Positions 42,781 to 44,650 of a stretch of DNA of 64,000 nucleotides are shown piece after piece; position 1 is the first letter of the stretch, and every line of letters starts with the position of its first letter. Made by a program: the position numbers and the translations under genes. Source of the stretch: Saccostrea echinata (taxonomy: Eukaryota); NCBI RefSeq assembly GCF_033153115.1, contig NW_026889774.1, positions 26,102,001 to 26,166,000 of the forward strand, read 5' to 3'. The notes below the pieces were generated by a model. The model was given only the letters and a program-made list of their open reading frames with translations, was not told where the DNA came from and did not search any database.

Positions 42781-44650
42781 ATGGTAAAAAGTCCACGTAG
42801 CCCAGGCGCTTTATTTGTGTGGACCATTTGTGTTGTACTGCTGTGGGGTGTTCAGATGGTAGACTCGAAACGTAAAGAAAACAAATGTATGAGGCATTAT
42901 TTCGTTCATACTATCGAACACCCGAAAAAGAATTGTGAAAAGAAGGTAAGAAATTATCATTTTTGCATGGACCTTTTTTTCGGTAGAGACGGTAACTTCT
43001 TACATAATAATTCTTAGTAACAATTAACCGTTTTCAGATATGTTCTGTACTGTCCAGTTGTTTAGTTGTCTACAATTACGTTTACCCATGACAAACAAAA
43101 TTTGTTTCATTCCATTGAAGACGTTCCTTCTTGAAAAACTATTATCAATTTCGACCTATTAGAGTTGATTTATTTTATTTTCCACTCTCTTAAAATACAT
43201 GTTCAGCACTTCAACATAAATTTGTTTTATGTAAGCATTCTTTTGGTAGTTATCTTCATCATATACAATTTGTGCAAAACTCTATACCTCAAGACCCGCG
43301 TTGTTTTGGGGACTGTGAAATGCCAGGTTCTCTTTGACAAAACATCCATGTTTGGATTGCCTTAAACAGTTTAGTCACGTTATTCGTGATGATGCCAAGT
43401 AAATACGGAAGACAAATGATTAAGTTGAATACACTGATATCCTCGTTTGTATTTTTATTGAGAGTTTATGGTGCTACAATTTTAAGACAACTCCGATATA
43501 AATCAAAGGATGTAGAGAGGTAAACGGACTTCTAATAAATAAGCTATATACCAAACTGTTCCTCCACTAGCTTCTAGATAATGAGCAAAGTGATAATCTG
43601 AAATCTACTCCATTTTGATTTGAGAGCTTACCTGAGGTACAATTCTATGTTACCATTCAAGTATTACAATAAAAAAGGTTGGTCAAATAAAAGGTAGGGC
43701 CCTTTTATTATAAATACATATGTCTTACTGCAATACTTAAGGATAAATAACACAAACTTTTTTCTTCCGAAATTCAAATATCTTTGCTGAAATAAGTGCC
43801 TCTCTCACTTTAGAAGTGATATTTGTTTATTTAAACAGCTAAATGTTTGACCAAGCCACATAATTTGTTAAAAAGCTCGAAAATACAACTTTAAAGCTCA
43901 ATGTAATTTTGAAAAGTTCTAAAAATGTAAAGTTTTCTTACTGCAGACTTCCTGGGGACATTTTCAAAAGCGTATCTTTACACTATACACAAGAAAAAAT
44001 TCTAAATTACATTTCCATTGAAAGAAATATTGAATAAATACATGTGTAACTCTTCTGTTTGGGAGATAAATTTGTTTGAGGTATGTTTAATTGCTTGTAA
44101 TTATAAACAATTTATAACTCAGAATTCATTCTCAGTTAAAAAAAAAAAGTGTTGATTTTAATTTTATTATACTTGATGATTTTTTTATATTTCAAAACGT
44201 TCCAATTATCGAAATAATATTGTTTATTTATATATCGCGCATACAGAAAGTATCTATAATGAGAATTGAAAATGATTCCCATTTTTAATAATTAAAAAAA
44301 ATGTAGTATGTATTGCAATGCACTTTGTTATCAAGAAATGTTCATGGAAAAACCTTGTATACTACAAAGCTTATTTTGCTTGACATTATTTAACTACGGC
44401 CATCTTTTTTTTTCAGCATGTTCTTCTGGTACGGTGTAAGGGTTTCTGCAATAAGTCCAAGACCGAGCCACGCGTGACCTTTAGCCCCGTCCTCTACCGC
44501 CCCTTTAATTACCACTGCAAGTGTTGCAGAGACTCCCTGTCCATTATGAAAGCTATCCGACTGAATTGTGAGGGCGGTCAGTCGGTGTTTGCTACCTACC
44601 GATATATCATCAGGTGTAAGTGCAGACATTGTAACTTTAACAGGTGGTAA
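42781..44650 (+). CDS. NDP: Norrin-like secreted cystine-knot protein, 132 aa, 2 coding exons
   Basis: Exons 42781-42945 and 44417-44650; AAG|gtaag ... tttttttcag|CAT, phase 0. Protein: MVKSPRSPGALFVWTICVVLLWGVQMVDS KRKENKCMRHYFVHTIEHPKKNCEKK|HVLLVRCKGFCNKSKTEPRVTFSPVLYRPFNYHCKCCRDSLSIMKAIRLNCEGGQSVFATYRYIIRCKCRHCNFNRW. It has a hydrophobic signal peptide, 11 mature cysteines with Norrin spacing, and the Norrin-typical motifs CMRH, HP, VLL.RC.G.C, EP.V.FS.VL..PF, C.CCR, KA.RL.C.GG, ATYRYI..C.C..CN. Confidence 0.92.

What the first reader, a model, noticed from the sequence alone, without database searches (positions are those of the whole stretch)
42781..44650. Intact Norrin (NDP) orthologue in an invertebrate, probably molluscan, genome
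Seen: two exons join in frame into a 132-aa secreted protein with 11 mature cysteines (C36, 52, 62, 66, 89, 91, 92, 106, 122, 124, 127). The ORF track misses exon 2. Known: vertebrate Norrin is a 133-aa cystine-knot homodimer with 11 cysteines. It is an atypical, non-Wnt ligand of FZD4/LRP5-6/TSPAN12, studied mainly in retinal vascularisation and the blood-retina barrier. By-eye alignment to the human sequence as I recall it gives about half identity over the knot with a single 1-aa gap, including the cysteines of the intermolecular disulfides. Inference: an animal with open circulation and no vertebrate-type endothelial barrier retains a Norrin ligand, implying an ancient bilaterian Norrin-Frizzled4 system of unknown ancestral function. 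Automated 'norrin-like' annotations may already exist; I cannot check that.
Basis: partly seen in the sequence, partly recalled or inferred. Interest (0 to 1): 0.9.

Follow-up and report, generated by a model that had tools for sequence, protein, structure and literature searches.

The report
Oyster Norrin gene, already annotated
The window holds an intact, spliced and transcribed oyster (Saccostrea echinata) orthologue of the vertebrate eye-vessel signal Norrin; it is real, but public databases already label it 'norrin-like' here and in many other invertebrates, so only its function in animals without vertebrate-type vessels is unknown.

Summary
Exon 1 (42781-42945) and exon 2 (44417-44650) join in phase 0 across a GT..AG intron into a 132-aa secreted cystine-knot protein with 11 mature cysteines. 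The product equals the RefSeq protein 'norrin-like [Saccostrea echinata]'. Assembled contigs from four public runs (two studies) carry exactly this junction.

It is a true Norrin orthologue:
- Exon 2 matches human Norrin at E 3e-21; the next family (mucin-2) scores 0.021.
- All 11 cysteines align, including the three intermolecular ones.
- The predicted fold hits only Norrin structures first (51% identity).
- The intron lies at the vertebrate K58|M59 position.
- In a knot-domain tree it groups with mollusc, priapulid, echinoderm, hemichordate, amphioxus and vertebrate Norrins, apart from six cystine-knot paralogues of the same genome (98/93 support).
- The gene is single-copy.

The genome also encodes a clear Frizzled-4 orthologue that keeps the Norrin-contact residues, and an LRP5/6-like gene.

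Signalling through Fz4/LRP5-6 is inferred, not shown. Contact residues on the ligand are only partly kept, and the predicted complex gave weak support (0.59 against a best control of 0.37).

Novelty is low: 'norrin-like' models already exist for more than ten invertebrate species. I found no paper on them, and recent papers still call Norrin the orthologue of insect bursicon.

The parts
42500..42780 (+). Transcribed 5' untranslated region (at least). Contigs run on for up to 474 nt upstream of 42500; whether that part is contiguous or a further 5' exon is unknown. In-frame stop TGA at 42772-42774.
   Evidence: Contigs cover 42500-42943 without a break (table 8); sequence.
42781..42945 (+). Coding exon 1: start codon, signal peptide with hydrophobic core ALFVWTICVVLLWGV, and the first beta-hairpin with C36 and C52. 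Ends ...CEKK, followed by donor gtaaga.
   Evidence: tail aligns to human Norrin 37-58. Identical to residues 1-55 of P0001.
42946..44416 (+). Phase-0 GT..AG intron of 1471 nt, at the position of the vertebrate NDP coding intron (K58|M59). It contains repeat fragments at about 43737-43875 and 43995-44069.
   Evidence: The joint 42943->44415 (cut +2) is seen in 4 runs. Exon-wise gene-call fragments from other molluscs stop at ...K|V, and those from vertebrates start at Q|MVLLARC.
44417..44650 (+). Coding exon 2: 77 aa with nine of the eleven mature cysteines, covering the rest of the cystine knot and the CxCC and C-terminal dimer cysteines. Stop codon at 44648-44650.
   Evidence: Human Norrin E 3e-21; Pfam Cys_knot 27.3 bits; 100% identical to P0001 residues 56-132.
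44651..44950 (+). 3' untranslated region (at least). Contigs extend beyond 44950.
   Evidence: Contigs cover 44415-44950 with 0-2 differences (table 8).

Best explanation
This is the single-copy, transcribed Norrin (NDP) orthologue of the oyster Saccostrea echinata. It is a roughly 100-residue secreted cystine-knot protein.

Shown:
- its identity, gene structure, splicing and transcription;
- conservation of all 11 cysteines and of the fold;
- its place in a Norrin clade that spans protostomes and deuterostomes;
- co-occurrence with a Frizzled-4 orthologue that alone among the four intronless oyster Frizzleds found here keeps the human Norrin-contact residues.

Inferred:
- it forms a disulfide-linked head-to-tail homodimer, through the cysteines equivalent to human C93, C95 and C131;
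- its beta1-beta2 and beta5-beta6 hairpins bind the cysteine-rich domain of oyster Fz4;
- together with LRP5/6 this stabilises beta-catenin, so the protein acts as a non-Wnt Frizzled ligand that predates vertebrate vasculature.

The tissue and process it serves in the oyster are unknown.
For: Identity:
- PDB sequence search: Norrin 3e-21, against mucin-2 0.021, sclerostin 0.058 and the 'bursicon'-named chain 0.93.
- Exon 1 is collinear with Norrin 37-58.
- The AF2 model has pLDDT 84.3. Its first 16 Foldseek hits are all Norrin (E about 1e-8, 51% identity); the next is C. elegans alpha2/beta5 at 9e-4.
- In the knot-domain ML tree, 20 Norrin-likes split from 6 own-genome DAN/Cys-knot paralogues with 98/93 support, and in 96% of bootstrap trees.
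- There are 24 invariant positions across 19 sequences from five phyla.
- The genome has one locus only.
- The spliced form is in 4 runs from 2 studies.

Receptors:
- An intronless Fz4 gene: 5.8e-213 to human FZD4, with the next Frizzled at 2.5e-130. RefSeq calls it 'frizzled-4-like'.
- Its CRD aligns without gaps to the human FZD4 CRD at 4e-69.
- F96, M105, K109, M157 and M159 are all kept in oyster Fz4, but not together in the other three oyster Frizzleds.
- An exon best matching LRP6 propeller 1 as a single domain: 195 bits, against LRP4 155 and LDLR 140.

Ligand residues, set against the human sites of Chang et al. 2015 (PMC4497409):
- Fz4 site: R41, V45, L61 and K104 identical; R38->K and A63->V conservative.
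- LRP patch: R97, G112 and R121 identical.
- GAG site: K58 and R107 identical.

Predicted Fz4-CRD:Norrin complex: 0.59 against a best control of 0.37, partner pLDDT at least 77, runs agreeing in at least 80% of contacts, verdict 'weak support'.
Against: Several human contact residues are changed:
- Fz4 site: H43->Y, D46->H (this loses the salt bridge to Fz4 K109) and K102->I.
- LRP patch: K54->N and R90->N.
- GAG site: R109->N and R115->S; on Fz4, H154->Q and N155->H.

The complex score is in the band where passes are 'more often wrong than right unless the guess was likely beforehand'. It may also reflect the model's memory of the solved human complex.

The Fz4 and LGR4 footprints on Norrin overlap (PMC12234955), so conservation of the hairpins does not say which receptor is used.

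TSPAN12 and type-B LGR orthologues were not looked for conclusively. There are no expression-site data and no functional data. The tree's outgroups are unnamed paralogues of this genome, not named bursicon or GPA2/GPB5 sequences.
Confidence: 0.62

Rival explanations
1. It is a true Norrin orthologue, but its ancestral and oyster receptor is a type-B leucine-rich-repeat GPCR (the LGR4/5/6 or insect Lgr2 class) rather than, or as well as, Fz4.
For: Human Norrin binds LGR4 in a solved 2:2 complex (PDB 9khh and 9uok among the fold hits; PMC12234955). Of the LGR4-contact residues named there, R41, Y122 and L61 are identical in the oyster and L124->I and S47->T are conservative (alignment). The related cystine-knot ligands bursicon and GPA2/GPB5 use LGRs (PMC3937510; PMC9910494).
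Against: M59->H in the hydrophobic core. I did not search this genome for an LGR4-type receptor. The Fz4 CRD contact residues are strikingly kept in oyster Fz4 only, which suggests constraint from a Fz4-specific ligand. This reading does not exclude the main one.
Confidence: 0.2
2. It is a true Norrin orthologue that acts mainly as an extracellular antagonist of BMP/TGF-beta ligands, like the neighbouring DAN family. Frizzled-4 agonism would then be a later, deuterostome or vertebrate, acquisition.
For: After Norrin, the nearest structural and sequence relatives are BMP antagonists (NBL1, gremlin, PRDC, sclerostin). Roch and Sherwood group NDP with the BMP antagonists (PMC4079206). From my own knowledge, not checked here: Xenopus and mammalian Norrin have been reported to antagonise BMP/Nodal (Xu et al. 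2012; Deng et al. 2013).
Against: P0001 gets no Pfam DAN hit, whereas the genome's real DAN-domain genes do. The Fz4-contact hairpin residues and the Fz4 CRD counterpart residues are conserved. The predicted Fz4 complex is above its controls.
Confidence: 0.1
3. It is not Norrin but another C-terminal cystine-knot protein (bursicon subunit, GPA2/GPB5, DAN, mucin-type CTCK) that converged on 11 cysteines.
For: All these families share the knot and similar lengths. Deng et al. 2013, as reported in PMC3937510 and PMC11271308, treat Norrin and bursicon as orthologues.
Against: There is an 18-order-of-magnitude E-value gap to every other family. Identity to human Norrin is 51%, against 16-22% to others. 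The intron position is shared. The clade is separate from six own-genome cystine-knot paralogues. DAN/bursicon-like genes coexist in the same genome.
Confidence: 0.02
4. It is an annotation artefact or a dead gene: a chance ORF pair or a pseudogene.
For: The runs are labelled 'RNA?' only as a guess, so the intron-less contigs could in principle come from a processed DNA copy.
Against: The genome has no intron-less copy. The frame is intact. There are 24 invariant positions across phyla. Four runs from two studies carry the spliced form with UTRs.
Confidence: 0.01

Closest known systems
Vertebrate Norrin (NDP; human Q00604; PDB 5BPU, 5BQC, 5CL1, 4MY2, 9KHH)
   Same: Length (132 against 133 aa). 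Signal peptide followed by a single cystine-knot domain. All 11 cysteines, including the C93/C95/C131 equivalents. About 51% identity over the knot with a single 1-aa gap. Same fold. Same phase-0 intron position. Partly the same Fz4, LRP and GAG contact residues.
   Different: Changed contact residues: H43Y, D46H, K102I, K54N, R90N, R109N, R115S and M59H (human residue, human number, oyster residue). A possible N-glycosylation sequon at N67-K-S. A short basic/aromatic C-terminal tail (NFNRW). No MAO or EFHC2 neighbours on this contig. The host has an open circulation and no vertebrate-type endothelial barrier.
'norrin-like' RefSeq/UniProt models of other invertebrates (Crassostrea virginica, C. 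angulata/Magallana gigas, Mytilus, Octopus, Gigantopelta, Nucella, Lottia, Priapulus, Strongylocentrotus, Diadema, Amphiura, Saccoglossus, Branchiostoma)
   Same: Same family and clade. Oyster sequences are 73-77% identical over the full length and 86% over the knot.
   Different: Molluscs keep the vertebrate CxCC motif. The priapulid, echinoderms and hemichordate have CxSC, and amphioxus has RxSC, so the dimer disulfide pattern probably differs there.
Bursicon / partner of bursicon, GPA2/GPB5 and DAN-family BMP antagonists
   Same: Cystine-knot fold, similar size, secreted. Some have 11 cysteines.
   Different: Only 16-22% identity and E-values of 0.02-1. Separate genes of that kind exist in the same oyster genome. 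So Norrin is a paralogous lineage, not the vertebrate counterpart of bursicon.

Membership tests
Norrin (NDP) | Best sequence similarity to Norrin rather than to other cystine-knot families | tested here: met
   Exon 2: Norrin 3e-21, against mucin-2 0.021, sclerostin 0.058, NBL1 0.52 and the 'bursicon'-named chain 0.93. Exon 1: the only hits are Norrin.
Norrin (NDP) | Eleven mature cysteines in the Norrin pattern, including the three intermolecular ones (human C93, C95, C131) | tested here: met
   One-to-one alignment; 12 Cys in total, one of them in the signal peptide.
Norrin (NDP) | Cystine-knot fold closest to solved Norrin structures | tested here: met
   AF2 pLDDT 84.3. Foldseek ranks 1-16 are all Norrin, E 1e-8 to 2e-6, TM (target-normalised) 0.63-0.72 for the untagged chains.
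Norrin (NDP) | Groups with vertebrate Norrin to the exclusion of paralogues of the same genome | tested here: met
   Knot-domain ML tree: split supported 98/93 and found in 96% of bootstrap trees. The full-length tree with long outgroups was unstable. No named bursicon, GPA2 or GPB5 sequences were available as outgroups.
Norrin (NDP) | Coding intron in phase 0 between human K58 and M59 | tested here: met
   Oyster K55|H56, shown by sequence and spliced contigs. Vertebrate exon-wise fragments begin at Q|MVLLARC and mollusc ones end at K|V. That human exon 2 ends at codon 58 is from my own knowledge.
Norrin (NDP) | Secreted: N-terminal signal peptide | tested here: inconclusive
   The hydrophobic stretch at residues 10-24 is modelled as a helix. 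No signal-peptide predictor was available.
Norrin (NDP) | Frizzled-4 CRD contact residues (R38, R41, H43, V45, D46, L61, A63, K102, K104) | tested here: inconclusive
   Four identical, two conservative, three changed. On the receptor side F96, M105, K109, M157 and M159 are kept in oyster Fz4 only.
Norrin (NDP) | Binds the Fz4 cysteine-rich domain | tested here: inconclusive
   Predicted complex 0.59 against a best control of 0.37; verdict 'weak support'. At 0.60 or under, the mark was reached by only 5 of 78 solved complexes and by all 4 passing mismatches. A like complex is solved, so the score may be memory.
Norrin (NDP) | LRP5/6 patch (K54, R90, R97, G112, R121) and GAG site (K58, R107, R109, R115) | tested here: inconclusive
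   Three of five and two of four are identical. An LRP6-like gene is present.
Norrin (NDP) | Disulfide-linked homodimer that activates beta-catenin signalling with TSPAN12 as co-receptor | not testable with these tools
   Needs protein biochemistry and reporter assays. A TSPAN12 orthologue was not identified among more than 50 tetraspanin matches.
Bursicon / DAN family | Pfam DAN domain or best similarity to bursicon or DAN proteins | tested here: not met
   P0001 hits only Cys_knot, with no DAN hit at E <= 1, whereas five other oyster ORFs hit DAN. E is 0.5-0.9 to NBL1 and the 'bursicon' chain.

The most novel reading that the evidence does not exclude
Norrin-Frizzled4 (with LRP5/6) is an ancient bilaterian ligand-receptor pair that still works in molluscs. 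It would have been lost in insects, nematodes and flatworms and later co-opted for the vertebrate blood-retina and blood-brain barriers. Norrin would then be a lineage separate from bursicon rather than its vertebrate orthologue, and the oyster would give a simple system in which to find the pathway's ancestral role.
Probability: 0.5. Interest if true: 0.6.

Novelty: already known. Interest (0 to 1): 0.35.

Why it matters
Norrin is studied almost only in vertebrate retinal and brain vessels. A well-conserved, expressed copy in an animal with open circulation shows the ligand is older than that role. The same holds for cephalopods, gastropods, a priapulid, echinoderms, a hemichordate and amphioxus.

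This makes the ancestral function testable in tractable larvae such as oyster and sea urchin. It also argues against the statement, still repeated in 2024 (PMC11271308), that Norrin is orthologous with Drosophila Burs/Pburs: oysters carry Norrin alongside separate DAN/bursicon-like genes.

The gene itself is not a discovery, since RefSeq already names it. Its value lies in the unexplored biology.

Tried and rejected
- Full-length tree with eight own-genome paralogues. Long branches fell inside the Norrin group with no support. I replaced it with a knot-only alignment.
- Naming the oyster DAN-domain ORFs as bursicon. The exact look-up found nothing, the homologue search gave only unnamed hits, and the Atlas gave NBL1, GPA2 or 'partner of bursicon' at similar scores. 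Undecided.
- Microsynteny with human NDP neighbours. No amine-oxidase (MAO) or DM10 (EFHC2) match lies near the locus on contig C25. The window neighbours are B-box/TRIM-like ORFs.
- TSPAN12. There were 51 tetraspanin matches and no way to pick the orthologue without a reference sequence.
- Predicted Fz4-CRD:Norrin complex: weak support only (0.59 against 0.37). I do not count it as evidence of binding.
- Literature. Ten searches found no paper on invertebrate Norrin beyond a BLAST note in EchinoDB (PMC9590158) and its absence from Fasciola (PMC6114109). Deng et al. 2013 (PMC3666258) is not held.
- The joined exon1+exon2 product of the window was never typed or searched as letters. The exons were searched apart by reference. 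For full-length work I used the public protein P0001 returned, which equals the two exon translations.
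Full report
**What is in the sequence.**
- An ATG at 42781 follows an in-frame TGA at 42772-42774. It opens a 55-codon exon that ends ...CEKK at 42945, directly before gtaaga.
- After a pyrimidine tract and cag, a second exon starts at 44417. 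It runs 77 codons to TAA at 44648-44650.
- The join is in phase 0 and gives 132 aa.
- The mechanical ORF list shows exon 1 read on into the intron, and only a GTG-started 58-aa piece of exon 2.
- The search with exon 2 returned a public 132-aa protein, P0001, 'norrin-like [Saccostrea echinata]', 100% identical over exon 2. Its sequence is exactly exon 1 plus exon 2. P0001 was used wherever a full-length sequence was needed.

**Transcription and splicing.**
- Four public runs hold parts of the stretch.
- Laid on 42500-44950, each gives one long contig (731-1480 nt) covering 42500/42747-42943 joined directly to 44415-44950. The tool reports this as 'skips 1471, GT..AG (cut +2)', which is 42945|44417.
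- The four runs come from two samples and two studies.
- The runs are labelled RNA only as a guess. But the genome has no intron-less copy, so these contigs are best read as mRNA.
- The contigs also show at least 280 nt of 5' UTR, with up to 474 nt more upstream whose structure is unknown, and at least 300 nt of 3' UTR.
- All four runs differ from the assembly at 42803 (C>G, P8R in the signal peptide) and 42816 (silent).

**Identity.**
- Against all PDB sequences, exon 2 matches human Norrin at 3e-21 over 73 residues with one 1-aa gap. The next families score far lower: mucin-2 0.021, sclerostin 0.058, NBL1 0.52, and a chain named 'bursicon' (in the C. elegans alpha2/beta5 entry) 0.93.
- The last 22 residues of exon 1 match only Norrin, residues 37-58, collinear with the exon-2 match.
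- Pfam gives Cys_knot only, with no DAN hit.
- All eleven mature cysteines align with human C39, 55, 65, 69, 93, 95, 96, 110, 126, 128 and 131. These include the three that form intermolecular disulfides in human Norrin (PMC4497409).
- An AlphaFold2 model built on a 19-sequence alignment has mean pLDDT 84.3. Its first 16 Foldseek hits in the PDB are all Norrin chains (E about 1e-8, 50-52% identity). C. elegans alpha2/beta5 (9e-4), PRDC, gremlin, NBL1, VWF-CK and FSH-beta follow at 16-22% identity.

**Family range.**
- An exhaustive search of 1.84 billion representatives found 46 relatives. A profile search added named ones.
- By the sources' names they come from:
  - bivalves (Crassostrea virginica, C. 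angulata/Magallana gigas, Mytilus);
  - gastropods (Lottia, Nucella, Gigantopelta) and a cephalopod (Octopus);
  - a priapulid (Priapulus caudatus);
  - echinoderms (Strongylocentrotus, Diadema, Amphiura) and a hemichordate (Saccoglossus);
  - amphioxus;
  - vertebrates from hagfish and lamprey to mammals.
- No arthropod, nematode, flatworm or cnidarian appeared among the named hits. A published BLAST of Fasciola also found none (PMC6114109).
- Twenty-four positions are invariant across 19 sequences.
- Many hits are exon-wise gene calls on short contigs, and they are informative:
  - mollusc fragments lose similarity right after the lysine equivalent to K55 and continue with Val (a GTN donor);
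  - vertebrate fragments gain similarity exactly at Q|MVLLARC.
- So the coding intron sits at the same codon boundary and phase in molluscs and vertebrates.

**Paralogue test.**
- In the oyster's own genome (923 Mb) P0001 finds only its two exons with strong scores. The next matches have E of 0.007 or worse.
- Those matches, and further ones found with the Pfam DAN and Cys_knot models, are mostly single-exon secreted cystine-knot ORFs with a DAN domain.
- A first tree on whole sequences was unstable, because very long outgroup branches fell inside the Norrin group.
- Restricted to the knot (first to last cysteine, 93 columns), the ML tree separates the 20 Norrin-likes from the six own-genome paralogues. 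Support for that branch is 98/93, and it is recovered in 96% of bootstrap trees.
- Inside the Norrin group there are vertebrate (94/98), ambulacrarian (82/96) and amphioxus (99/99) groups.
- Limitation: I could not obtain named bursicon or GPA2/GPB5 sequences. The tools could not decide which oyster DAN-domain genes are bursicon subunits.

**Receptors.**
- The genome has four intronless Frizzled genes and one multi-exon Frizzled-family match that I did not characterise.
- One of them (L012, contig C12) matches human FZD4 at 5.8e-213, with the next Frizzled at 2.5e-130. It is RefSeq 'frizzled-4-like [Saccostrea echinata]'.
- Its cysteine-rich domain aligns without gaps to the human FZD4 CRD (4e-69; FZD10 CRD 2e-44).
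- The human residues F96, M105, K109, M157 and M159 are all kept in oyster Fz4. The other three oyster Frizzleds each differ at two to four of them, and none has K109. F96 and K109 are named as Norrin contacts by Chang et al. 2015; the role of M105, M157 and M159 is from my recollection of FEVR and mutagenesis work.
- An exon on contig C1 matches LRP6 propeller 1 best when single-domain entries are compared: 195 bits, against LRP4 155 and LDLR 140.
- TSPAN12 and LGR4-type receptors were not resolved.

**Ligand contact residues** (human sites from PMC4497409; alignment).

| Site | Identical | Conservative | Changed |
|---|---|---|---|
| Fz4 | R41, V45, L61, K104 | R38->K, A63->V | H43->Y, D46->H, K102->I |
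| LRP patch | R97, G112, R121 | none | K54->N, R90->N |
| GAG | K58, R107 | none | R109->N, R115->S |
| LGR4 (PMC12234955) | R41, Y122, L61 | L124->I, S47->T | M59->H |

The Fz4 and LGR4 footprints overlap, so conservation cannot tell the two receptors apart.

**Predicted complex.**
- A predicted complex of oyster Fz4 CRD (residues 23-160) with mature oyster Norrin (30-132) scored 0.59 (three runs: 0.55-0.65) against a best control of 0.37.
- Partner pLDDT was at least 77 and the runs agreed in at least 80% of contacts. The verdict was 'weak support'.
- At 0.60 or under, the mark was reached by only 5 of 78 solved complexes and by all 4 mismatches that passed. A like complex is already solved, so the score may reflect memory.
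- I do not count it as evidence of binding.

**Mechanism.**
- Shown: an expressed, constrained, single-copy Norrin orthologue, beside an Fz4 orthologue with a conserved Norrin-binding face and an LRP5/6-like gene.
- Inferred: a disulfide-linked dimer whose two hairpins each bind one Fz4 CRD and recruit LRP5/6 to stabilise beta-catenin, as in vertebrates.
- Rivals, not mutually exclusive: signalling through a type-B LGR, and BMP/TGF-beta antagonism of the DAN kind.
- Readings as another cystine-knot family or as a dead gene are excluded by the data above.

**Novelty.**
- The gene is already in RefSeq with the right name, in this species and in more than ten other invertebrates.
- Ten full-text searches found no paper that discusses invertebrate Norrin, apart from a BLAST remark in EchinoDB.
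- Reviews and a 2024 paper still describe Norrin as orthologous with Drosophila bursicon.
- The coexistence of Norrin and separate DAN/bursicon-like genes in one protostome genome, and Norrin's presence in a priapulid, argue that Norrin is an old, separate lineage lost in insects.
- That is a modest, checkable correction and an opening for functional work, not a new kind of system.

Noticed in passing
alignments A1/A2; window 44513-44524 holds the oyster motif: At the human C93-x-C95-C96 motif, molluscs have CxCC like vertebrates. The priapulid, echinoderms and hemichordate have CxSC, and amphioxus has RxSC. The reciprocal C93-C95' dimer disulfides can therefore exist in molluscs and vertebrates but not in the lineages between them. 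That means either convergence or repeated loss.
   Followed up: partly
window 43737-43875 and 43995-44069 (inside the Norrin intron): Short pieces of many other, much deeper contigs (up to about 150x summed depth) match here and run on into unlike sequence. These are probably fragments of a dispersed repeat or transposon transcribed elsewhere.
   Followed up: no
window 42803 and 42816: All four runs read G and C where the assembly has C and T. The first changes Pro8 to Arg in the signal peptide; the second is silent. This is either a polymorphism or an assembly-individual difference.
   Followed up: no
G000 C16:4805725 / C28:15579783 (L004/L007); C14:6.97 Mb / C64:7.66 Mb; C19:2.07 Mb / C41:1.53 Mb: Near-identical gene pairs sit on different contigs of the 923-Mb assembly: a DAN-domain ORF, a DM10 gene with a neighbouring tetraspanin, and tetraspanins. 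These may be retained haplotigs or recent segmental duplications. Norrin itself is single.
   Followed up: no
L003:1480-1986 and L006:1405-1908 (G000 C15, 22 kb apart); L020 (C47): Three single-exon secreted DAN-domain ORFs of about 165 aa have motifs that by eye recall bursicon subunits (…CxGxCxSY…, …ERFCxCCRE…, …CxCRPC…). The tools did not name them, and their exact sequences are not in the protein collection.
   Followed up: partly
window 6953-8191 (-) and 30141-31673 (+): Two long ORFs with a B-box zinc finger (TRIM-like) flank the Norrin gene. No neighbour resembles the human NDP neighbours MAOA, MAOB or EFHC2.
   Followed up: partly
P0015 (Saccoglossus, 847 aa) and P0041 (Lampetra, 203 aa): The hemichordate model carries the Norrin domain at the end of an 847-aa protein with 53 cysteines, which is probably a fused gene model. 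The lamprey protein has a Gly/Ser-rich insertion in the beta3-beta4 region.
   Followed up: no
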